Source of the DNA: Octopus bimaculoides
Lineage: Eukaryota
Assembly: GCF_001194135.2 (NCBI RefSeq)
Contig: NC_068993.1
Location: 23,262,798-23,308,428, forward strand
Length of the DNA: 45,631 nt
Reading direction: 5' to 3'
Each line of letters opens with the position of its first letter. Within the stretch, counting starts at the first letter, position 1. Below, one piece after another: positions 7,698 to 43,414 of the stretch. The notes beneath the pieces were generated by a model. That model was given only the letters and a program-made list of their open reading frames with translations, was not told the DNA's origin and made no database searches. The position numbers and the translations under genes were made by a program.

Positions 7698-8542
7698 CAG
7701 GGTGTGATGTATAAACTGTCGTCTAAATTATACAAATATTAAAATAGCACTGGCATCTCATTTTAACATATGTATTTATCAAAATTAAATAAAAAATACC
7801 TTGAAATACTAAAGAGAAGAGTAAGTTTCTTCAACAAAATCGGCGTTGGCTTCAACCACAGCATCCAAACGAATTCGGATTTTCTTGCAACCCTTCTGGG
7901 CGTTCTCCCTGTTCATGTTCGTGAATGCTGCCATAATTCTTACTTTCAGTTCATCTTTGGTGTTACAAGGAGTTTTGTTAGTTTCCCGCCCAAATGCGCC
8001 TAACACATAACAGAGAAATAAGTTCCAAGCTGGGGAGTTACATGACAAGATTTGAGGAGTGGTGTGGTCGCAAAATTTGTCTGACAGCAATGACTGGGTT
8101 CTCCTGCTTGGGTGGTATGGTGTAGAGTCCTGTGGCCAGACAGAGGGTCTTCCAGCAGACCCCTCGTGACCCAGGGCAGCATTACCTCAAGCAGATACTT
8201 GATGAAGGCCACCGTGTTAAGTCTGAGCCCGTGTGGAATGATGAACGGAGCTATAACGTCGCCATCTCTAGTGATCACTCCAAACACAATGATGTTCACT
8301 GGATGTTTCATTTTTATTATTATTGGTACCAGTTCGTATTGGAGTTTCCGGTGCGAATGCCAAGCATTACAGCATGCCATTTCCAAATTTCTGGCGGAGT
8401 GAATTGCATCAAGGTGTTGTTTCTCTCATAGACCATTCCCAACTGACCCTACTGTAATCTTTAGTCGACAATACCAAAAACAAACAATGCTCATGTGTGA
8501 GATAAACAGATAAAATGGTGACAATTTACCCATCACAGGCTG
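7698..8542 (-). mobile_element. Internally deleted maT (DD37D, Bmmar1-like) Tc1/mariner transposon
   Basis: TA-flanked degenerate TIRs: CAGGGTGTGATGTATAAACTGTCGTC (left) versus CAGCCTGTGATGGGTAAATTGTCACC (right, reverse complement). Minus-strand remnants are the N-terminus MQFTPPEIWKWHAVMLGIRTGNSNTN (ATG at 8409), then KMKHPVNIIVFGVITRDGDVIAPFIIPHGLRLN, then after a frameshift VWPQDSTPYH...NSPAWNLFL...ETNKTPCNTKDELKVRIMAAF...RLDAVVEANADFVE. The second Asp and the decayed third-Asp position are 37 residues apart. Confidence 0.88.
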
Positions 8543-9780: not shown

Positions 9781-9990
9781 AGGAGCTTGCAGAATCATTA
9801 GGACGCCGGACAGAATGCTAAGCGGCATTTCGTCCGTATCTGTGTTCTGAGTTCAAACCACCGAGGTGGACTTTGTGTTTCATCCTTTCCTATGTGATGG
9901 AATAATTACCAGTTTTATACTGGGATCGGTGTCATCGTCTTATCCGCTTCCCAGAAATCTCTTGCCTTGTGCTAAAATTTTAAATCACTA
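9781..9990 (+). mobile_element. tRNA-derived SINE, family A (degenerate)
   Basis: A-box-like TGCAGAATCATTAG, B-box-like GAGTTCAAACC, body CCGAGGTGGACTTTGTGTTTCATCC and tail CCTTGTGCTAAAATTT. It aligns by eye with the copy at 28541-28755. Confidence 0.85.
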
Positions 9991-11531
9991 TTTATACATC
10001 TAACATCAATGATGTCCACTAGATAAAAATGCAGTGAGCCCTCACCACCTACTATTTTTTATATCAATGTTACATGAAGGTCGTTTAGATACGTGCCTAC
10101 AGTAGTGACATTATTTTCAAGCTTATGACTTTATGACTTTCTCTTATGTACCTGTCCTAATGTTATAGCGATGCCCTCAGTAAATATCATGACGGTATAA
10201 CCTTTTTTACAATGGTGCAATACCGTACTAAACGTCTGTCTGTTTATGCAAGAGGTTTGTAGTAACTTTATAATGATGTACCTACTCTTGCGCACATCAT
10301 TAACATTTGGTGAACTGAGCTAATAGGCCCCGCATTAGTGATAATTCGACAGGAGACCTGACGTACTTCCAAATCTTCCACACCTGTATTTAAATATAAA
10401 ATATATAGTGCATTTCCATTTGACAAGTAAATCCCAGCTTTGGAGATGTATAACGTATAAGAAGGTGCTATGCACTTTTATCAGCAGAAGTAGCGTTCGT
10501 GGAAATTGTCATACAGAGAGATTTAGTTTGAAATGATGTTGACGTGAAAAAGGATTAGTGAGACTTATAAAGCAAGACATTTACTTGCTATTGAAGCTTT
10601 TTAAAAACCGACCAATTTATACTGAAAAAGATCGAATATTCGCAATCGGTTGCATTTGTATTTAGGTGCCATGAATGTACTTTGGGATTAAGGATCAAAC
10701 TCGCAGCTGAGAGATATTATTTCTAATTGCAACTAAACCAGATCTGAACAACCAGGTTTATTTAATATTGGCATACAGTGCAAAGCTGCGAAGCACGAAA
10801 TTCTGAAAATGTTCAAAAGGAACCGATAGATATTTAAACAATAAAACAGTAATAATAATAAAAAAATGCTGCTACTTATTTTTCGGAGGCTTAAAAGATT
10901 AAAGACAAATAAACTTATTTACCAAAACTCAATATATATTCTCCAAACAAGTATTACTTCTTGTGTTCATACTTATTATATATTGATGAATAGTATTGTA
11001 ATAATAATAAATGTTATTATCGTTGTTGTTGTTATTGCTTTTATAATTATTATTATCGTTGTAGTTCGTCTATTGACATGTTGTGCACATCGCTCCCATA
11101 AGTTTGTTGTTATTTATACTCTGTACGTTTGTTATCGTTACCGAGATTAACTAACCAGAACGTAAGGGAGCTGGTTATTTCTATCTAATCCTAAGTGACT
11201 AACTTGTTGCTTGCTTAGGCTGAGACGCTAATCAGTCTTTTTCTCAAAAAAGATGACGATCGAGAATTGATCGTCGGTCGAAAAGAGTAGCCGGTCATCG
11301 GTAGAATAAAACAGCCAAGTCATAAAACCCATTCACAGTTTTTGCAGCAGCGACATCGATGACAACAGCACAATAGCGCATGTGACATCTATAAAGTAAC
11401 TTAACGATGGTTTCAGAACTTCCTTCACCATCCCAGGAACAAATATATTCAATGACAACAAAATGCAACAGTAGCGGCAAGAACACTGCCAACTCTACCA
11501 TGAGCGTCAGTGACATCAAACCCGCACTACC

Positions 11532-11992: not shown

Positions 11993-12107
11993 GTCGCCAC
12001 AACTGGAGGTGTGTTTTTGGAGGCCTGTATGCGTATGAGCAATTAACTTGTTTAAAAGGTTCTATACTGTATTTTGCTGTTTAAATCGTTTTGCAAGCCA
12101 ACTGCCT

Positions 12108-13690
12108 TATGACGTGATATAAACATTTTTGATTTCAAATTTCTTCAAAAATTTGCTTCGATGGAAGGAAACATTGAAGACGGCGACGAAAAGCGGGAGT
12201 ATGTAAGGAAGGTGGTACAGCACGACGCCTTCCCCGTCCTCCCCACCATGATTGGCAATAGACAACAGAAAGAAGAAGAAGAAGAAGAAGAAGAAGAAGA
12301 AGAAGAAGAAGAAGAAGAAGAAGAAGAAGAAGAAGAAGAAGAAGAAGAAGAAAAAGAAAAAGAAGAAGAAGAAGAAGAAGAAGAAGAAGAAGAAGAAGAA
12401 GAAGAAGAAGAAGAAGAAGAAGAAGAAGAAGAAGAAGAAGACGGAAGGAGTAAAGTTTTCTTCACTATATGGAAATTGTAGTGGCACCAAGAACTTCATT
12501 GAGAATACATGCTGCAAAGAATCTAAAAACAATAGAGTTAGCAGCGGTTAGCATTTTATTGGTTAACATCTCATTGGAGAACAAATTAGGAAAACTAAGC
12601 AAGGCAGCAAAATGTATGAAAATGAATGGAAGGAGGGCAGAATTGACTCCTCCAAGCGACATGCTTAAAGCAACAGCCAAACGGACAGTGGTCTATATAA
12701 ACGTGAACACAACGACACGGAAACTCGAAAATGCTAAACGTGACCAGGTGGAAAAAATCATTGAAACATATATGGTAGGACATTCACCACATTGTTGCAA
12801 CAGCGGGGTTGTACCGCGGAGTAAAGGTCCTTTGTAAGACCGAGGGATAGGTGATACAGAGCTCGGTGACAAGCAGCGCACCGGGGAAATCGTCCTCTTC
12901 CCAACGTACATGGGAAGATGGGCGGTACGAATTAAAGTATCAGGTGTCTCACCAGACCTTGATTTATGGTGGATTCTCGCCTGTATTTGTACAGACAGGG
13001 GAGAGAAATTTCCGGGATGTTAAAAGGTCCAAGAAGGAGAATCTTGTTGGTACTATCTTGGAGGTCTTTCATCACGTGAATCCAGGCCAGTTAGAGAAAT
13101 TCCTAGACGTGATTTCCCTCTCGAATGGTGTACAACTAAGGTTGAACGGCCACTCGCGGTTTTTTGCCCACAGAACGAGAACAGAAGGGCAGAAAGAAAT
13201 GTCCAAACGAAAGCACCGCAACCCAAAAGTCGACAAATACAACAACAACAACAACAAAAAGGCATGTGAATAGAAACAGAAATTGAACTCAAGTTGACAA
13301 AACAGGCAGGTGTTACAGTAAAGGTGGCAGTGGGAGTAGCACCAGCAGCAGTAGCGGAAACTACACTAGCAGCAGAAGCAACAATAACTACAAGGGAACC
13401 AGAACAAACAACACCAGAAGAAAACATACAACACAAGGCTCTACCATGCACCCAAGTAATGATGAGGGGGAGGCCCAAAAGAAAAAAAAACAAACAAAAC
13501 AAGAAAACAACACAGAAACAAGGGATAGTGGAGGCATCTAATACGAGTGATTAGAGTAGACGCTGTAGAATTTAGCAGAAATCTAGAGATAGAGAAGACT
13601 TGAGTAGAGGGTGACTTAGTTTGGAAAGAAGCACTCAGTAGAGGCAAAGCAACACACGTCTGGCAGCGAGATAGGTTCTGAATCAATTCT
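12108..13690 (+). mobile_element. Degenerate 5' region and ORF1-like (gag-like) remnant of a non-LTR retrotransposon, possibly L1/Tx1 clade
   Basis: GC-elevated, purine-rich block. Frameshifted plus-strand pieces read KRTVVYINVNTTTRKLENAKRDQVEKII / EIVLFPTYMGRWAVRIKVSGVSPDLDLWWILACIC / KKENLVGTILEVFHHVNPGQLEKFLDVISLSNGVQLRL, followed by a low-complexity A/T/Q/K tail. The family call is from recalled similarity only. No intact zinc knuckle or ORF2 is visible. Confidence 0.45.
12269..12440 (+). repeat. Long (GAA)n tract, about 56 units with one interruption
   Basis: Seen directly. It gives the poly-E/K/F/S pseudo-ORFs. Confidence 0.98.
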
Positions 13691-17820: not shown

Positions 17821-17971
17821 GTTATGTACGTTATTTACATTATATATATTTGACGGATATTTGTCCTCATTTTGTTTGTTGTTAACACAACGTTTCGGCT
17901 GATATCTTGGGGTTAGTAGCCCGCGCTCTTAACCATACGTCATATGCCCGTGGGTATATGGCGTAGTGGTT
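17821..17971 (-). mobile_element. Internally deleted tRNA-headed SINE with a Penelope-like half-hammerhead tail and an inverted duplicate of its head
   Basis: Minus strand reads GGGCATATGACGTATGGTTAAGAGCGCGGGCTACTAACCCCAAGA (tRNA-like 5' half), fused to TATCAGCC-GAAACG-TTGTGTTAACAAC...ATATC-CGTC. Plus strand 17952-17971 (GGGTATATGGCGTAGTGGTT) is an inverted copy of the head. Confidence 0.7.
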
Positions 17972-18126
17972 TATCAATCCATAAATATAAATAATACCTC
18001 GAACGAGTTCGGCGACAATTGTGATGAATGTGTGATAATTTATAAACATGCGTATATATACACAGGCAGAAACAAACACATTGCGCACACACAGACATTC
18101 GCTGATTATAACTTATTTACATATGC

Positions 18127-18364: not shown

Positions 18365-18397
<33 letters not shown>

Positions 18398-18398
<1 letters not shown>

Positions 18399-18427
18399 GA
18401 GTTATTAATATTTCTAAGTCTCTCTAA

Positions 18428-18464
<37 letters not shown>

Positions 18465-18687
18465 ATTGATTGATAGATAGATGCATGTCTATGCCTGTTT
18501 ATATTTCGTGTATGATCACATTCTATGTTCTGTTTATAAAGTGGCTGTATTATGGACGTATTGTTGTCGATGTACGCGCGTAACGGAAACATTTTTTCTG
18601 AGCAAAGCAATTTAATACAAGCATTGATGTTGACGGTCACTTGAAATTATTTATCGTGCGTTGATGCGTGTAAATATATTCTGCCTA
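18398..18687 (+). repeat. Copy 1 of a 290-bp identical direct duplicate
   Basis: Identical by eye to 19661-19950, including the length of the (GA)n tract. It ends exactly at the N gap. Confidence 0.95.
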
Positions 18688-19363
18688 NNNNNNNNNNNNN
18701 NNNNNNNNNNNNNNNNNNNNNNNNNNNNNNNNNNNNNNNNNNNNNNNNNNNNNNNNNNNNNNNNNNNNNNNNNNNNNNNNNNNNNNNNNNNNNNNNNNNN
18801 NNNNNNNNNNNNNNNNNNNNNNNNNNNNNNNNNNNNNNNNNNNNNNNNNNNNNNNNNNNNNNNNNNNNNNNNNNNNNNNNNNNNNNNNNNNNNNNNNNNN
18901 NNNNNNNNNNNNNNNNNNNNNNNNNNNNNNNNNNNNNNNNNNNNNNNNNNNNNNNNNNNNNNNNNNNNNNNNNNNNNNNNNNNNNNNNNNNNNNNNNNNN
19001 NNNNNNNNNNNNNNNNNNNNNNNNNNNNNNNNNNNNNNNNNNNNNNNNNNNNNNNNNNNNNNNNNNNNNNNNNNNNNNNNNNNNNNNNNNNNNNNNNNNN
19101 NNNNNNNNNNNNNNNNNNNNNNNNNNNNNNNNNNNNNNNNNNNNNNNNNNNNNNNNNNNNNNNNNNNNNNNNNNNNNNNNNNNNNNNNNNNNNNNNNNNN
19201 NNNNNNNNNNNNNNNNNNNNNNNNNNNNNNNNNNNNNNNNNNNNNNNNNNNNNNNNNNNNNNNNNNNNNNNNNNNNNNNNNNNNNNNNNNNNNNNNNNNN
19301 NNNNNNNNNNNNNNNNNNNNNNNNNNNNNNNNNNNNNNNNNNNNNNNNNNNNNNNNNNNNNNN
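18688..19363. other. Assembly gap (N)
   Basis: Run of N. Confidence 0.99.
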
Positions 19364-19660
19364 GCCAAGCCAACATGGCAGTCCCAAAATTAGGACGAAA
19401 GCTGCCGTGAATTAGCTCCAAGAAGCCATCGCCTCTAGCTAGCTATGTGACACACGAAACCTGTGTCCTTTATAACCTTCGAACAGGGGAGGTCAGCAGT
19501 GTCCCCCTGCTGGTTTGGCATCTGCAGACTAGACTAGTTTCAGGGTGTTGCCCCTTGTCAATGCAGAGTAGCCAAGCCTTAGCCAGGCGGCGCTGCTGAC
19601 TATCTGCTCGAAGGTTATTTATCTAATTTCAGTGGAATCTATCCACTGGTTTTCAGAAAT
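19364..19660 (+). other. GC-rich, highly self-complementary element of unknown class, probably the end of a mobile element or a structured RNA
   Basis: Four consecutive stem-loops at 19374-19409, 19449-19467, 19472-19618 (a rod) and 19630-19648. The 5' end is lost in the gap. Confidence 0.6.
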
Positions 19661-19690
19661 AGAGTTATTAATATTTCTAAGTCTCTCTAA

Positions 19691-19727
<37 letters not shown>

Positions 19728-19950
19728 ATTGATTGATAGATAGATGCATGTCTATGCCTGTTTATATTTCGTGTATGATCACATTCTATGTTCTGTTTAT
19801 AAAGTGGCTGTATTATGGACGTATTGTTGTCGATGTACGCGCGTAACGGAAACATTTTTTCTGAGCAAAGCAATTTAATACAAGCATTGATGTTGACGGT
19901 CACTTGAAATTATTTATCGTGCGTTGATGCGTGTAAATATATTCTGCCTA
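19661..19950 (+). repeat. Copy 2 of the 290-bp direct duplicate
   Basis: Identical to 18398-18687. Confidence 0.95.
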
Positions 19951-25120: not shown

Positions 25121-26363
25121 TATTGCGTCATTCCACAAATAACGTGATTTTTAATACTTGTATTAAATCTAAAATGTATTTAATCTAAAATATACTCTTC
25201 TTCGTTTTCTACAATACTTTTCCATCTGTCTTGTAGACTTGCAAGGCTCCTCTTCCAAAATTCACTTGTCGGTGACGAAAAGTACTCCTCCAGTACTGTT
25301 CTGACCTCTTCTAAAGAATTCATATTTCTGACGTCCAAATGAGTTTGTAGAATGCGGAATAAATGCTAATCAGATGGGGTATGTCCGGCGAATATGGTGG
25401 GTGGGGCATCGTTTCCCATTCAAACTGCTCCAGTCTTTTGAATGTCATCCTCACTATATGTGTCCAAGTAGCAATCCTTATGGACGAACACCTTTCGTCT
25501 TGAAACCAAAGATGGTCATTTTTCGTGTAGCGCTGGCTTAATGCCGCTCAAGTTATTCGCAGTATATCACCTTTGTTATCGTTTGGTTTGGGCGTAAATG
25601 TTTATAATGGACTAAACTTTACATATCCCACCAAACAGATAACAACACATTACATGAGTGAAGACCTTCTTTAGCCTGGGGCACGGTGTTCACCTTTCTT
25701 TACCCACTGTCTTCGGCGCTTGACATTTTTATAGAGAACCCATTTCTCGTCACCAGTCATTATTTGGTCCAAAAAGAAGAACACACATTCACTCACTGCG
25801 ATTAGACTCGGAAATTTTGTGAGGAACCCATTGACCCAAATTGCGGACTTTTCCGATGGCACTCAGGTGTCGATGAATGGCTGAATGACAAAATCCAAGT
25901 TTCTCTGCTAGTTTCTCAGCAGTTACAATGAGATTTTGTTCTACAAGGGTCTGCGAGACTGCCTCATCGAGCTCTACAGGTCGTCCAGGACGAGTTTCGT
26001 CTTCTAGGCTGTCGTTTCCGGTTCGGAAATTCTGGAACCACCGTTGACACTGGCTTACGCTTATTGTCCAATCGCCATATATTGCATTCATATTCCTCGC
26101 ACTTGACGTTGCGTTCTGGCCTATGTTGAACTCATAAAGCAAACTCTACCGAATATGCTCCTTTGTCACTTCCATTATAAATTTGAAAAAATAACTGTTT
26201 AAATCAAGCTGCCCTCTTCAAAACTTGCATTAAGAATAAGTTCATGTTAAATTTACTACCTGCCTTTATAGCAAGTTGATGCAAGCAGTTTATCATGTCC
26301 CCCTACAACTTTTAGTTTATGCAATTGAAAAAAAAAACACATTATTTATGGAATGATCCAATA
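25121..26363 (-). mobile_element. Near full-length mariner (DD34D) transposon, non-functional
   Basis: About 30-bp TIRs: TATTGCGTCATTCCACAAATAACGTG (25121) and TATTGGATCATTCCATAAATAATGTG (right end, reverse complement). Total length about 1.24 kb. Confidence 0.95.
25180..26175 (-). pseudogene. Mariner transposase pseudogene
   Basis: MEVTKEHIR*SLLYEFNIGQNA...CQRWFQNFRTGNDSLEDETRPGRP...GQWVPHKISE, then FLDQIMTGDEKW, HKD, PHPPYSPDI and ...LQDRWKSIVENEEEYILD*. It has multiple stops and frameshifts and a short deletion after the WVPH motif. Confidence 0.95.
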
Positions 26364-26442
26364 TTAAAAGCCGCCAACTAACCATTAAGGTAAAATATTA
26401 TTTTTTATTACCCAGGAAATAAATACAACCTTATAATCCAGA

Positions 26443-26620
26443 TTTCAAAGTTTGGCACAAGTCCAGCAATATCCAAGGAGGGATTAAGTCGATTACATCA
26501 ACCTCCAGTATGCAAGTGGTACTTATTTTATCAACGCCAAAGGAATGAAAGGCAAATTCCACCTAGCGAAATTTGAACTCGGAACGTAAAGACAGACGAA
26601 ATACCGCTAAGCATTTCGCC
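26443..26620 (-). mobile_element. SINE family A, 5'-truncated
   Basis: TTTCAAAGTTTGGCACAAG...GAATGAAAGGCAAA...AATTTGAACTCGGAACGTAAAGACAGACGAAATACCGCTAAGCATTTCGCC is the reverse complement of the family A sequence seen at 28541. Confidence 0.9.
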
Positions 26621-27007: not shown

Positions 27008-27203
27008 CAGTGTACATTTAAACACAAAGGAGAGATGTCCATTACAAGACATCTAACCCGCTAGAAGGAGCAGTCAAACTCCAAACCACAATTAGGGATA
27101 ATTTTGAAATTATTCCTAATTGTGGTTTGGAGTTTGACTGGTCTTTCTAGCGGGTTAGATGTCCTATTATGGACACCTCTCTTATATGTTTAAATGTACA
27201 CTC
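27008..27203. mobile_element. 196-bp foldback MITE with Tc1-like CAGTG termini and flanking TA
   Basis: The element is essentially two ~97-bp inverted arms with about 9-10 mismatches, separated by 2 nt. TA lies at 27006-07 and 27204-05. Confidence 0.88.
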
Positions 27204-28540: not shown

Positions 28541-28755
28541 GGCGGTGACCTAGCAGAAACGTTAGCATTCCGGGCAAAATGCATAGCGGTGTTTCGTCTG
28601 TCTTTACGTTCTGAGTTCAAATTCCACCGTGGTCGACCTTGCTTTTCATCCTTTCGGGATCTAGAAAGTAAGTACCAGTTGCGTACTGGGGTTGATCTAA
28701 TCGACTGGCCCCCTCCCCCAAAATTTCCGGCCTTGTGCCTAGAGTAGAAAAGTAT
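28541..28755 (+). mobile_element. tRNA-derived SINE family A, full-length and well preserved
   Basis: GGCGGTGACCTAGCAGAAACGTTAGC (A box), GAGTTCAAATTCC (B box), TTTCATCCTTTCGG, GTACCAGTTGCGTACTGGGG and the tail CCTTGTGCCTAGAGTAGAAAAG. Confidence 0.92.
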
Positions 28756-32994: not shown

Positions 32995-33391
32995 GGCGCA
33001 GTAGTAGCTGTGTGGTAAGTAGCTTGAATACCGATCACATGGTTCCAGGTTCAGTACCACTGCGTGGCACCTTGTGCAAATGTCTTCTAGTATAACCTCG
33101 GGCCGACCAAAGCCTTGTGATTGGAATTGGTCGACGGAAACTGAAAGAAGCCTGTCGTATATATGTATATATATGTATGTGTGTATATATGTTTGTGTGT
33201 CTATGTTTGTCCCCCCCCATCAACGCTTGACAACCGATGCTAGTGTGTTTACGTCACCGTAACTTGGCGGTTCGGCATAAAGACCGATATAATAAGTATT
33301 AGGCTTACAAAGAATAAGTCCTGGGGTCAATTTGCTCGACTAAAAGCGGTGCTCCAGTATGGCCGCAGTGAAATGACTGAAACAAGTAAAA
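32995..33391 (+). mobile_element. tRNA-derived SINE family B (about 400 bp) with an internal TA/TG microsatellite
   Basis: Head GGCGCAGTAGTAGCTGTGTGGTAAG...GGTTCAGTACC, core GCACCTTGTGCAAATGTCTTC...GACGGAAACTGAAAGAAGCC and tail GGCCGCAGTGAAATGACTGAAACAAGTAAAA. Confidence 0.9.
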
Positions 33392-35297: not shown

Positions 35298-35510
35298 GCG
35301 AGATGGCAGAATCGTTTGCACTCCGAGCAAAATACTTAGCGGTAATTAATCCGTCTTTACGTTCTGAGTTCAAATTCCGCCAAGGTAGACTTAACCTTTC
35401 ATCTTTCTGGAGACTATAAAATAAGTACAACATGGGAACTGGGGTCGATGTAACCAGCTTAACCTTCTTCTAAAATGACTGGCCCTGTGCTAAAATTCGA
35501 AACTAATTTA
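35298..35510 (+). mobile_element. SINE family A
   Basis: GCGAGATGGCAGAATCGTTTGC, CTGAGTTCAAATTCCGCC and the tail GGCCCTGTGCTAAAATTCGAAA. Confidence 0.88.
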
Positions 35511-35729
35511 TTATTTTCTACTCTAGGCACAAAGCCTGAAATACTTGAGGAGAGGCCAGTCGATTAGATCGGCCCCAGTACGCAACTGGCACTTAAATCA
35601 TCGACCTCGAAAGGATCAAAGTCAAAGTCAAAGTCAGCCTCGGAGGAATTTGAACTCAGAACGCAAACACAGACGAAATACCACTAAGCATTTCGCCCGG
35701 CGTGCTAACGTTTCTGCCAGCTCACCGCC
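35511..35729 (-). mobile_element. SINE family A, tail-to-tail with the previous copy
   Basis: TTCTACTCTAGGCACAAAGCC...GGAATTTGAACTCAGAACG...CTAACGTTTCTGCCAGCTCACCGCC. It carries an internal (TCAAAG)x3 expansion. Confidence 0.92.
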
Positions 35730-36782: not shown

Positions 36783-36995
36783 TTTTTCTACTGTAGGCAC
36801 AAGACCCGAAATTTTGGGGGAGAGGGCCAGTCAATTAGATCGACCTTAGTACGCAAATGGTACTTAATTTATCGACGCCGAAAGGATGAAAGGCAAAGTC
36901 GATCTCGGTGCAATTTAAACTCAGAACGTAAAAACAGACGAAACAAGGCTAAATATTTCCCCCGGCGTGTTAATGTTTCCTGCCATCTCGCCGCC
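36783..36995 (-). mobile_element. SINE family A
   Basis: TTCTACTGTAGGCACAAGACCCGAAATTTTGGGGG...GAAAGGATGAAAGGCAAAGTCGA...TAAACTCAGAACG...CTGCCATCTCGCCGCC. Confidence 0.92.
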
Positions 36996-37949: not shown

Positions 37950-38122
37950 CTAATAATGACACAAGGCCTGAAATTTTGAGGAGGGGACTAGTCGATCACA
38001 TCGACCCCTGTGTTTCACTGGTACTTAATTTATCGATCCGGAACGAATGAAAGAAAAAATTGAGCCCTGCGGAATTTGAACTCAAAACATAAAGACAAAA
38101 TATTGCAACGCGTTTTACCCGA
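37950..38122 (-). mobile_element. SINE family A, truncated
   Basis: GACACAAGGCCTGAAATTTTGAGG...GTACTTAATTTATCGA...GCGGAATTTGAACTCAAAAC. Confidence 0.85.
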
Positions 38123-41499: not shown

Positions 41500-42424
41500 A
41501 TGAGTCGTGAAGACATTGAATATAGGGCCATTTTACGCTATTTATGGAAAAAAGACTGAGTTTAAGGGCAACGGCTAAAGTAATTAATGAGGTGAAAGTG
41601 GCAGGAACTTTTCCAGAACTTATGGCACAAAACTAGTTCTGATGTTTCAAGGAAGTTGACACAATCCTCAAAAACAAACAAGGACAGAGAGACTTCTAGT
41701 AGAATATGAATCCTTGTTTGAAATATATGGATAGTAAAACAGTGGCACTCATACATTGTCGTCTAAACTTGAACCTTCACAAAATACCGTCAATGGATAC
41801 CTCCATAAGCTTGCCCTTGAGAAAACACTGTTGAGAGGTTCCTCATGAACTGACAAATGAGCGGCTTCAACGACGCCTGGATCTTTTGCAAAAGACTACT
41901 GGGAAACCCTTGAGATGCCCGTTTTTCGCATCGAATTTATAATACGGGATTAAAATGGACTTGTTTTCGTAATTCTAGTAAGTGACTATTACCGTCAGAC
42001 CTCAGGACCAGTTGTTAAACAAGCACTGTTTGAACAAAAGATCTTGCTATGTGTTTGGTGGAAATTTAGGGATGCACTGCACTTAGAGCTTCTCGCAGAT
42101 AGCCATGCTGAAAACGATAAACTTCATGCCCAACAACTACAGCTTCGCAAATGCACTACCCGGCAGAGCTCAATCGAAGCCGCACACACACTTGAGGAAT
42201 TTGAGGGACTAGAAGTTCTGGCTCACACTGCTTACAGTCCAGTCCAGTCCTTACACCATCAGAGCACTATCTTTTACGATCCATGGCACATTCCCTACAC
42301 GGACGGAAGTTCAACAATGTGGATGAGGTTGGAAACGGTATTATATAGAATTATAATGCTATTTTATCTCTGGCTACAACGGCAAAAGACAATTGAATAT
42401 GACGGCATATATTTTGCTGAATAA
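41500..42424 (+). pseudogene. Decayed mariner transposase
   Basis: MSREDIEYRAILRYLWKK / LSLRATAKVINEV..GT..ELMAQN*F*CFKE, VPHELTNERLQRRLDL, EQKILLCVWWKF, LEVLAHTAYSP, EHYLLRSMAHSLHGRKFNNVDEV and QRQKTIEYDGIYFAE*. It has many frameshifts and the TIRs are not recognisable. Confidence 0.85.
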
Positions 42425-42629: not shown

Positions 42630-43414
42630 NNNNNNNNNNNNNNNNNNNNNNNNNNNNNNNNNNNNNNNNNNNNNNNNNNNNNNNNNNNNNNNNNNNNNNN
42701 NNNNNNNNNNNNNNNNNNNNNNNNNNNNNNNNNNNNNNNNNNNNNNNNNNNNNNNNNNNNNNNNNNNNNNNNNNNNNNNNNNNNNNNNNNNNNNNNNNNN
42801 NNNNNNNNNNNNNNNNNNNNNNNNNNNNNNNNNNNNNNNNNNNNNNNNNNNNNNNNNNNNNNNNNNNNNNNNNNNNNNNNNNNNNNNNNNNNNNNNNNNN
42901 NNNNNNNNNNNNNNNNNNNNNNNNNNNNNNNNNNNNNNNNNNNNNNNNNNNNNNNNNNNNNNNNNNNNNNNNNNNNNNNNNNNNNNNNNNNNNNNNNNNN
43001 NNNNNNNNNNNNNNNNNNNNNNNNNNNNNNNNNNNNNNNNNNNNNNNNNNNNNNNNNNNNNNNNNNNNNNNNNNNNNNNNNNNNNNNNNNNNNNNNNNNN
43101 NNNNNNNNNNNNNNNNNNNNNNNNNNNNNNNNNNNNNNNNNNNNNNNNNNNNNNNNNNNNNNNNNNNNNNNNNNNNNNNNNNNNNNNNNNNNNNNNNNNN
43201 NNNNNNNNNNNNNNNNNNNNNNNNNNNNNNNNNNNNNNNNNNNNNNNNNNNNNNNNNNNNNNNNNNNNNNNNNNNNNNNNNNNNNNNNNNNNNNNNNNNN
43301 NNNNNNNNNNNNNNNNNNNNNNNNNNNNNNNNNNNNNNNNNNNNNNNNNNNNNNNNNNNNNNNNNNNNNNNNNNNNNNNNNNNNNNNNNNNNNNNNNNNN
43401 NNNNNNNNNNNNNN
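42630..43414. other. Assembly gap (N)
   Basis: Run of N. Confidence 0.99.

What the first reader, a model, noticed from the sequence alone, without database searches (positions are those of the whole stretch)
19364..19660. Unclassified ~300-nt element that folds almost entirely into hairpins, with a 147-nt G-U-containing rod
Seen: in an AT-rich genome this GC-rich block forms four consecutive stems. H1 pairs CATGGCA (19374-80) with TGCCGTG (19403-09) and encloses GTCC-CAAAATTA-GGAC-GAAA. H2 is GACACA-CGAAACC-TGTGTC (19449-67). H3 is a rod (19472-19618) with segments ATAACCTTCGAACAG/CTGCTCGAAGGTTAT, GTCAGCAGTGTC/GGCGCTGCTGAC, CCTG/CAGG, GGTTTGGC/GCCAAGCC and TCTGCA/TGCAGA. H4 is CAGTGGA-ATCTA-TCCACTG (19630-48). 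Several arm differences are G-U wobbles on the plus strand, as expected for single-stranded RNA structure rather than a decaying DNA inverted repeat. Known: non-autonomous retroelements (retrozymes, Penelope pLTRs, LINE UTRs, DIRS termini) carry such folds. GTCC-CAAAATTA-GGAC-GAAA resembles stem II plus GAAA of the Schistosoma SMalpha hammerhead, but the required CUGANGA is replaced by CATGGCA. Inference: this may be the terminus of an undescribed structured mobile RNA or a ribozyme-like motif. It is the best candidate for a new system in this window.
Basis: partly seen in the sequence, partly recalled or inferred. Interest (0 to 1): 0.72.

Follow-up and report, generated by a model that had tools for sequence, protein, structure and literature searches.

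The report
Hairpin-rich octopus interspersed repeat copy
The hairpin-rich 294-base block is real, but it is most likely one copy of an ordinary short non-coding repeat of octopus genomes that contains an old, decaying inverted repeat, and it is not a ribozyme or a selected RNA structure.

Summary
The block folds far better than shuffles (z -6.1; rod alone -6.9). The minus strand folds equally well, and the G-U asymmetry (4 versus 1) is not significant.

A second copy lies in Octopus vulgaris chromosome OX597823.1. It is 85% identical over window 19364-19578, sits in unrelated flanks, and has a possible 7-bp target duplication. So this is an interspersed repeat.

That copy lacks the outer 3' arm of the rod, H4 and the tail. 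Of 41 comparable pairs, none changed on both sides, 4 became wobbles and 7 broke. Paired columns are no better conserved than unpaired ones. The rod's two arms differ more from each other (74.5%) than the 5' arm differs between the two copies (88.7%), so the palindrome is old and its arms drift independently.

The 20-mer GTCCCAAAATTAGGACGAAA does match helix II, loop 2 and GAAA of the Schistosoma hammerhead. However, CUGANGA is absent in both copies, helix I cannot form, the motif is degraded in O. vulgaris, and Rfam finds nothing.

In this assembly, 293 bp before the gap repeat exactly after the element. That gives an "empty" version, (TA)n|AATAGAG, and a "filled" one. This points to a presence/absence variant or an assembly artefact.

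Verdict: an unclassified non-autonomous repeat, probably a minus-sense retroposon. Low interest.

The parts
19364..19657 (-). Visible copy of the repeat (294 bp, 50% G+C). The left end coincides with the contig start after the gap. The right end is defined by the start of the duplicated flank. The sense strand is inferred, not shown.
19364..19578 (.). Part shared with the Octopus vulgaris copy (L003 9965-10175), 85% identical. This is the family core.
19364..19373 (-). Terminal pentamer repeat: (GCCAA)2 on plus, which is (TTGGC)2 on minus. It reads GCCAA-GCTAA in O. vulgaris. It is the candidate short tandem-repeat 3' tail of a minus-sense retroposon.
   Evidence: read from the sequence
19374..19409 (.). 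Hairpin H1: 7-8 bp outer stem, inner GTCC/GGAC stem and a 6-nt bulge. In O. vulgaris 2 outer pairs are broken and 1 wobble becomes Watson-Crick.
19381..19400 (+). Hammerhead-like 20-mer GTCCCAAAATTAGGACGAAA. It equals Schistosoma helix II + loop 2 + GAAA apart from a 2-nt loop insertion. It reads GTCCAGAAATATAGGACAAAT in O. vulgaris.
19425..19456 (.). Best-conserved stretch between the two copies (32 nt identical). It lies mostly outside the predicted hairpins.
19449..19467 (.). Hairpin H2 (6 bp). There is one G-C to G-U change in O. vulgaris.
19472..19618 (.). Rod H3: an imperfect 147-bp inverted repeat.
19579..19618 (.). Outer 3' arm of the rod. It is absent from the O. vulgaris copy and supplies most of the exceptional folding energy.
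19619..19657 (.). AT-rich end with hairpin H4 (19630-19648). It has no counterpart in the O. vulgaris copy.
18688..19363 (.). Assembly gap (676 N) that abuts the left end of the element.
18368..18394 (.). (TA)n tract that directly precedes AATAGAG in the version without the element.
18395..18687 (+). 'Empty-site' copy of the right flank, 293/293 identical to 19658-19950.
19658..19950 (+). Right flank of the element, the duplicate of 18395-18687.

Best explanation
The block is one copy of a short (about 0.2-0.3 kb), non-coding, G+C-rich interspersed repeat family of octopus genomes. It is a non-autonomous mobile element of unclassified type.

Shown:
- The family has at least two copies in unrelated flanks.
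- The exceptional fold comes from an internal inverted repeat whose arms are old and drift independently.
- No ribozyme core is present.
- This assembly holds one version of the locus with the block and one without it, next to a (TA)n tract.

Inferred:
- The element is a retroposon whose sense strand is the window's minus strand.
- It would be copied by target-primed reverse transcription by a partner LINE or Penelope-like enzyme.
- That enzyme would recognise the 3' stem-loop (H1 on the minus strand) followed by the short (TTGGC)n tail.
- The O. vulgaris copy is then a 5'-truncated insertion, and 19657 is the 5' end of a fuller copy.
- The rod is a relic of an ancient inverted duplication in the master copy. 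One possible origin is snap-back self-priming from the apical hairpin. It is not a maintained RNA structure.
For: Second copy:
- P0009 = CAI9729092.1 of Octopus vulgaris was found by phmmer.
- Its locus L003 (OX597823.1) aligns with window 19364-19578 at 85% over 212 nt, with no flank similarity.
- The copy is a G+C-rich island, 9965-10175, between AGTTATC and AATTATC.
- The window and L003 share four other repeat families at 67-86% identity.

No selection on pairing:
- 0 compensatory, 4 wobble and 7 broken pairs out of 41 comparable.
- 85% versus 80% identity in paired versus unpaired columns, p 0.37.
- The shared part alone folds at only z -1.8.
- Arms are 74.5% alike, against 88.7% between the copies.

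Other points:
- Both strands fold alike.
- No open reading frame and no terminal inverted repeats.
- Pentamer repeat at the left end in both copies.
- Exact 293-bp flank duplication, with (TA)n at the empty site. The other four gaps lack such a duplication.
Against: - Only two copies could be obtained, so the consensus, the termini and the copy number are unknown.
- The candidate target duplication is 6 of 7 in AT-rich DNA and could be chance.
- No tRNA, 5S or 7SL head, pol III boxes or poly(A) were recognised.
- The left junction in the window is hidden by the gap, so no target duplication can be read here.
- The few G-U wobbles lean towards the plus strand (4:1), opposite to the proposed sense strand.
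- The two versions of the locus could be paralogues or an assembly artefact and not alleles.
- Dfam and Repbase could not be searched, so the family may already have a name and class.
Confidence: 0.6

Rival explanations
1. The block is a decayed member of a hammerhead-bearing retroelement lineage: a metazoan non-LTR retrozyme, an SM-alpha-like element or a Penelope-like-element pLTR. H1 would be a dead type I hammerhead and the rod would be the self-paired retrozyme body. Active relatives would self-cleave and circularise.
For: - The 20-mer at 19381-19400 matches Schistosoma helix II + loop 2 + GAAA at 18 of 18 letters apart from a 2-nt insertion (sequence confirmed in PMC7118274). None of 100 shuffles of the window contained the pattern.
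- After GAAA, a 5-bp helix followed by UC can be drawn (read).
- The size (about 300 nt) and the self-pairing fit non-LTR retrozymes (PMC7229834).
- Penelope-like elements favour (TA)n targets, carry 30-40-bp tails and upset short-read assemblies (PMC8557442). The empty site here is (TA)n, and a 39-nt AT-rich end follows the rod.
Against: - CUGANGA is absent in both copies (CAUGGCA, UAUAGCA). Position 15.2 is G and 16.2 is C, against the GAAAY/RUH rule. Helix I strands do not pair.
- The motif region is one of the two least conserved stretches between copies (74%), and GAAA is lost in O. vulgaris.
- Rfam gives no hammerhead or other ribozyme hit at E<=10.
- No second tandem unit is visible.
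- G+C is 50%, whereas retrozymes are described as below 45%.
- Helix II sequences differ among real retrozymes of coral, mussel and axolotl, so identity with Schistosoma is not what homology predicts either.
Confidence: 0.08
2. The block is a DNA-level foldback or MITE-type element, or a composite in which the 147-bp rod is a small DNA transposon nested in another repeat. It would move by cut-and-paste through its terminal inverted repeats.
For: - The rod has 15-nt ends that are 14/15 complementary.
- Both strands, and DNA parameters, fold equally well.
- A 4-bp TTTA stands on both sides of TAACC...GGTTA.
- A bona fide TA-flanked MITE rod lies in the same window at 27008-27203 and has a relative in O. 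vulgaris.
Against: - Homology with the O. vulgaris copy runs without a break across the left boundary of the rod (19449-19578). The rod is therefore not a separate insertion in this copy.
- The arms are only 74-84% alike, with indels.
- The 294-bp unit as a whole has no terminal inverted repeats.
- TTTA in AT-rich DNA is weak evidence.
Confidence: 0.15
3. The block is a functional structured RNA locus, such as a hairpin-RNA or miRNA-like precursor or an ADAR substrate, whose folds are maintained by selection on plus-strand RNA.
For: - Very strong fold.
- 4 G-U versus 1 A-C among arm transitions on the plus strand.
- The rod is 4 kcal/mol more stable on plus than on minus.
Against: - No compensatory change, and 7 broken pairs.
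- The outer arm is missing in the other copy.
- Paired columns are not better conserved.
- The whole block folds better on minus.
- No Rfam family matches.
- Expression could not be tested.
Confidence: 0.04
4. The block is a chimeric contig end or a foreign contaminant with no biological link to the flanks.
For: - The block starts exactly at a contig edge next to a gap.
- The flank is duplicated.
- Composition differs from the surroundings.
Against: - An 85% identical copy sits inside a chromosome-level Octopus vulgaris assembly.
- There is no match in plasmids, phages, bacterial or archaeal genomes, metagenomes or viral contigs.
Confidence: 0.05

Closest known systems
Non-autonomous non-LTR retroposons with a 'stringent' LINE-type 3' end
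   Same: - Short, non-coding and dispersed.
- One copy is truncated at one end and sits between similar 7-mers.
- On the minus strand a stem-loop (H1) lies directly before a terminal (TTGGC)2 repeat.
- No terminal inverted repeats.
   Different: - No recognisable pol III head.
- No partner LINE identified.
- The tail has only two units.
- Orientation rests on one truncated copy.
Metazoan non-LTR retrozymes and the Schistosoma SM-alpha hammerhead repeat (PMC7229834; bioRxiv 10.64898/2026.07.22.740005)
   Same: - About 300-nt, heavily self-paired, non-coding unit.
- A 20-mer identical, apart from a 2-nt insertion, to hammerhead helix II/loop 2/GAAA.
- A possible link to Penelope-like insertion habits: a (TA)n target and assembly trouble.
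   Different: - No catalytic core and no helix I.
- No tandem units seen.
- 50% G+C.
- The motif is not conserved in the second copy.
- No Rfam hit.
MITEs and foldback elements, such as the TA-flanked MITE at 27008-27203 of this window
   Same: A rod of 150-200 nt formed by inverted repeats that folds equally well on both strands.
   Different: The rod here is internal to a longer repeat unit. Its arms are much more diverged. No convincing target duplication is present, and the unit ends are not inverted repeats.

Membership tests
Hammerhead ribozyme, type I | Core CUGANGA 5' of helix II | tested here: not met
   CAUGGCA in the window (19374-80) and UAUAGCA in the O. vulgaris copy. No CUGANGA occurs on either strand of the block (read).
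Hammerhead ribozyme, type I | GAAAY after helix II, and RUH at the cleavage site after helix III | tested here: not met
   The window has GAAAG, and the only drawable helix III ends in CUC (15.2 G / 16.2 C). O. vulgaris has CAAAUG. The rule is quoted from PMC7229834 supplement.
Hammerhead ribozyme, type I | Helix I formed by the strands 5' of the core and 3' of the cleavage site | tested here: not met
   GCCAAGCCAA and CAAGAAGCC are not complementary.
Hammerhead ribozyme, type I | Match to Rfam hammerhead covariance models | tested here: not met
   No hit at E<=10 on 107, 501 or 45631 bases.
Metazoan non-LTR retrozyme | Head-to-tail tandem units, each with an intact type I hammerhead | tested here: not met
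   No internal direct repeat exists beyond an 8-mer. The O. vulgaris copy is a single 211-bp unit. The 5' side in the window is hidden by the gap.
Metazoan non-LTR retrozyme | Unit of 170-400 nt, highly self-paired, low G+C (below 45%) | tested here: inconclusive
   Size and pairing fit. G+C is 50%.
Metazoan non-LTR retrozyme | Expressed as circular RNA | not testable with these tools
Penelope-like element (pLTR region) | RT and GIY-YIG coding region, pLTR partial tandem, hammerhead in the pLTR | tested here: not met
   No open reading frame lies in or beside either copy and there is no hammerhead. The (TA)n target and the 39-nt AT-rich end are only consistent with such an element.
MITE / foldback DNA transposon | Terminal inverted repeats at the ends of the mobile unit, with a fixed-length target duplication | tested here: not met
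   The unit ends GCCAAGCC... and ...TTTTCAGA are not inverted complements. The rod's own ends pair, but family homology crosses its left boundary. The TTTA flanks are weak evidence.
SINE / non-autonomous non-LTR retroposon | Dispersed copies with target duplications of variable sequence; 5' truncation | tested here: inconclusive
   One extra copy was found, flanked by AGTTATC/AATTATC and truncated at the right end. The window's left junction lies in the gap.
SINE / non-autonomous non-LTR retroposon | Pol III head derived from tRNA, 5S or 7SL | tested here: not met
   ARAGORN found none. There are no Rfam tRNA, 5S or 7SL hits in the block.
SINE / non-autonomous non-LTR retroposon | 3' tail: poly(A), or a short tandem repeat preceded by a stem-loop | tested here: inconclusive
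   (TTGGC)2 lies on the minus strand right after H1 in the window, and TTAGC-TTGGC in O. vulgaris. There are only two units.
Helitron | 5' TC, 3' CTRR preceded by a hairpin, insertion between A and T | tested here: not met
   The minus strand starts with TC and has H1 10 nt from its end, but it ends in TTGGC. The empty site shows the junction between T and A.

The most novel reading that the evidence does not exclude
The family descends from a hammerhead-bearing, Penelope-dependent retrozyme lineage in cephalopods, where none has been described in the papers searched. Younger or master copies would still carry an intact type I hammerhead next to the rod and would make circular RNAs. The copy here would be a dead relic that kept helix II, loop 2 and GAAA.
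Probability: 0.07. Interest if true: 0.45.

Novelty: new member of a known kind. Interest (0 to 1): 0.12.

Why it matters
It matters little beyond repeat annotation. The result shows that a very strong single-sequence fold, with G-U pairs and a striking 20-letter match to a famous ribozyme, can come from an ordinary repeat that carries an old inverted duplication.

It also flags a likely heterozygous insertion or haplotype duplication at a scaffold gap in this octopus assembly.

If the minority reading were right, it would add cephalopods to the animals with retrozyme-like elements.

Tried and rejected
- No other copy in the window (blastn, word size 7).
- Rfam at gathering and at E<=10, on three stretch sizes: only microsatellite noise.
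- No tRNA found.
- blastn against plasmids and phages found nothing.
- Exact-pattern scans found nothing: viral contigs four times, metagenome contigs twice, bacterial and archaeal genomes twice.
- Word-indexed protein search with the longest frame, and with all six frames joined, found nothing. Only the exhaustive phmmer search found the O. vulgaris open reading frame.
- Exact look-ups of 14 distinct window open reading frames, aimed at a gap-free version of the locus, were all absent from the collection.
- Mariner homologues led to contigs of JGI sample 3300002938. These share only the mariner with the window and are not octopus-like.
- Three full-text searches for 12-20-mers of the element found only unrelated primers.
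- A search for papers on hammerheads in cephalopods found none.
- A sliding-window fold scan was dominated by microsatellites and was out of register with the rod, so it was of little use.
- Considered and dropped: tandem duplication of a 1263-bp unit (there is no second copy of the block downstream), SECIS and K-turn readings of H1, and a tRNA-like reading of the minus-strand 5' end (only partial A/B-box resemblance).

Full report
**Observation.** H1, H2, the 147-nt rod H3 and H4 are all present at the stated coordinates.
- The block is 50% G+C in a 34% window.
- As RNA it folds at -116.8 kcal/mol, z -6.1, with 0 of 200 dinucleotide shuffles as good.
- The rod alone gives -76.3 kcal/mol, z -6.85.

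The structure is real and non-random, but it is not strand-specific.
- The minus strand gives -122.3 kcal/mol, z -6.4.
- The rod also folds with DNA parameters at z -5.2.
- Aligning the arms as DNA gives 4 transitions that read as G-U on plus and 1 on minus (p about 0.19), plus 6 transversions and 14 gap columns.
- Several transitions sit at CpG/TpG sites, and CpG observed/expected is 0.44 in the block against 0.84 in the window. This is what methylation-driven decay of a DNA palindrome would give.
- A larger and cleaner rod, a TA-flanked MITE, lies at 27008-27203 in the same window. Rods are therefore ordinary in this genome.

**Context in the assembly.** The block starts at the first base after a 676-N gap.
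- The 293 bp just before the gap (18395-18687) are 100% identical to the 293 bp just after the block (19658-19950), microsatellites included.
- The element therefore ends at 19657.
- The assembly holds two versions of one junction: (TA)n|AATAGAG... without the block and ...TTTTCAGA|AATAGAG... with it.
- None of the other four gaps has duplicated flanks; three of them are bordered by microsatellite runs on both sides, and the fourth (42630-43414) on one side only.
- (TA)n tracts of at least 6 units cover only about 1.4% of the window, so the position at a tract edge is not random. However, microsatellites are also where assemblies break.
- The simplest reading is a presence/absence variant that the scaffolder laid in tandem.

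**Searches for relatives.** Most searches found nothing.
- No second copy in the window.
- No Rfam match and no tRNA.
- Nothing in plasmids, phages, viral contigs, metagenomes or prokaryotic genomes.
- Nothing in the word-indexed protein search, even with all six frames joined.

An exhaustive phmmer search with the 62-residue stop-free frame (19411-19596) found P0009 at E 5.7e-7.
- P0009 is CAI9729092.1, a 'hypothetical predicted protein' of Octopus vulgaris.
- It is encoded on chromosome OX597823.1 of GCA_951406725.2, fetched as locus L003.
- At the DNA level, window 19364-19578 aligns with L003 9965-10169 at 85% over 212 nt. A few more bases align up to 10175.
- The flanks are unrelated.
- The window and L003 share four other repeat families at 67-86% identity. 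One is an abundant tRNA-type SINE of about 215 bp with long target duplications. Another is the 27-kb MITE.

The window is therefore from an octopus or a close relative, and the block is a member of an interspersed repeat family.

**What the second copy says.**
1. Extent. In O. vulgaris the copy is a G+C-rich island of 211 bp (9965-10175) in AT-rich DNA. It lies between AGTTATC and AATTATC, a possible 7-bp target duplication with a 6 of 7 match. Its left end is the same GCCAAGC... with which the window contig starts. This suggests that 19364 is at or near the true end of the element. On that reading the gap opens in repetitive sequence at the element's left edge (the (TA)n target tract or the element's own pentamer repeat), as the microsatellite-bordered gaps of the window do.
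2. Missing parts. The copy stops after GCCGAACC, which corresponds to GCCAAGCC at 19571-78. The outer 3' arm of the rod (19579-19618), H4 and the AT-rich end have no counterpart.
   - Without that arm the shared part of the window copy folds at only z -1.8, with 8 of 200 shuffles as good.
   - The O. vulgaris copy folds at z -3.1 into a different structure.
3. Pair changes. On the two-sequence alignment, 41 predicted pairs are comparable. None changed on both sides, 4 changed on one side to a wobble and 7 are broken.
   - 4 of 11 is about what neutral, transition-biased change predicts.
   - Paired columns are 85% identical and unpaired columns 80% (p 0.37).
   - The best-conserved stretch, 19425-19456, lies mostly outside the hairpins.
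4. Age of the palindrome. The window's 5' arm is 88.7% identical to the O. vulgaris 5' arm but only 74.5% identical to the reverse complement of its own 3' arm.
   - The inverted duplication therefore predates the common ancestor of the two copies.
   - The arms have drifted apart without compensation.
   - The O. vulgaris copy most likely lost the outer arm by truncation.

**The hammerhead lead.** GTCCCAAAATTAGGACGAAA (19381-19400) matches CTGATGA-GTCC-CAAATA-GGAC-GAAA of the Schistosoma ribozyme in helix II, loop 2 and GAAA, apart from a 2-nt loop insertion. The ribozyme sequence is printed in PMC7118274. The pattern occurs in none of 100 shuffles of the window. A 5-bp helix III ending in UC can also be drawn.

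Every defining feature fails, however.
- CUGANGA is CAUGGCA here and UAUAGCA in O. vulgaris.
- GAAAY/RUH (rule quoted in the supplement of PMC7229834) reads GAAAG/CUC.
- The helix I strands are not complementary.
- The O. vulgaris copy reads GTCCAGAAATATAGGACAAAT, and this region is among the least conserved (74%; only the rod's apical-loop window is lower).
- Real retrozymes of coral, mussel and axolotl have different helix II sequences. Identity with a flatworm ribozyme is therefore not what descent would predict.

I keep a small probability (about 0.07-0.08) that the family descends from a retrozyme or Penelope-like lineage. Those elements are about 300 nt long, self-paired, favour (TA)n targets and disturb short-read assemblies (PMC7229834, PMC8557442).

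**Mechanism.**
- Shown: a dispersed, non-coding repeat with no terminal inverted repeats, no open reading frame and no ribozyme core.
- Inferred: the sense strand is the minus strand. Three observations support this.
  1. The O. vulgaris copy is truncated at the right end and may carry a target duplication around the truncated copy. This is the pattern of 5' truncation in target-primed reverse transcription.
  2. The left end carries (GCCAA)2, which is (TTGGC)2 on the minus strand, in the window, and GCCAA-GCTAA in O. vulgaris.
  3. On the minus strand the H1 stem-loop lies directly before this short tandem repeat. That is the layout of 3' ends recognised by 'stringent' LINE reverse transcriptases (established knowledge, for example UnaL2).
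- Origin of the rod: the family core ends exactly with the 3' strand of the apical hairpin. Snap-back self-priming of a cDNA from that hairpin is therefore one plausible origin of the outer arms in an ancestral master copy. This is speculation.
- Evidence against the model: no pol III head, no identified partner, only two copies, a weak target duplication and a wobble bias that leans the other way.

**Comparison and novelty.** The block works like, and is best filed as, an unclassified non-autonomous interspersed repeat, probably a retroposon. Membership in hammerhead ribozymes, retrozymes, Penelope pLTRs, MITEs and Helitrons was tested, and at least one defining feature was not met in each. 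Dfam and Repbase could not be searched, so the family may already be catalogued.

**Verdict.** The 'structured RNA / ribozyme-like' part is not supported. Interest is low (0.12).

Noticed in passing
window 27008-27203: A near-perfect palindrome of about 195 bp, TA|CAGTGTACATTTAAAC...GTTTAAATGTACACTC|TA. It is a Tc1/mariner-type MITE with a TA target duplication, followed by a (TA)n tract. It folds at -80 kcal/mol per 150 nt and gives sub-threshold mir-2513 hits on both strands. A 76-78% relative lies at L003 2926-3041.
   Followed up: partly
window 18395-18687 and 19658-19950, gap 18688-19363: An exact 293-bp duplication lies on both sides of the gap, so the scaffold probably holds two haplotypes or versions of one locus in tandem. 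The gap length and the duplicate are likely assembly artefacts.
   Followed up: partly
window 28550-28751, 36783-36973(-), 35507-35721(-), 26454-26617(-), 35330-35428, 37960-38115(-), 9814-9972; L003 15419-15629: An abundant tRNA-type SINE of about 215 bp that ends in ...CCTAGAGTAGAAAA. It has long target duplications, for example ATATTACTACCTGA on both sides of the copy at 36.8 kb. It is unrelated to the element studied.
   Followed up: partly
window 8000-8386(-), 25789-26368(-), 42044-42424(+): Mariner-type transposase fragments (HTH_48 and DDE parts). The closest proteins, 70-79% identical, come from eukaryote-like contigs of JGI sample 3300002938, which share nothing else with the window.
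   Followed up: partly
window about 17880-17975 (-): A tRNA-like stretch (GGTTAAGAGCGCGGGCTACTAACCCCAAG) lies upstream of the (TA)n tract, possibly the head of another SINE family. ARAGORN does not call it.
   Followed up: no
window 33005-33391; L003 10983-11355 and 4956-5324: Another repeat family of about 390 bp is shared between the window and O. vulgaris at 71-83% identity. It is unclassified.
   Followed up: no
L003 9287-9402 and 10717-10835: Two direct repeats of about 115 bp, about 91% identical and 1433 bp apart, bracket the O. vulgaris copy of the element. They could be two copies of a small repeat or a partial tandem (pLTR-like) arrangement. No homologue is visible in the window.
   Followed up: partly
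window 12107-12532: A long poly-purine/poly-pyrimidine tract (GAA/TTC-type) gives poly-E, poly-S and poly-F open reading frames on both strands. It lies in a stretch of about 41% G+C at 12-14 kb whose nature was not examined.
   Followed up: no
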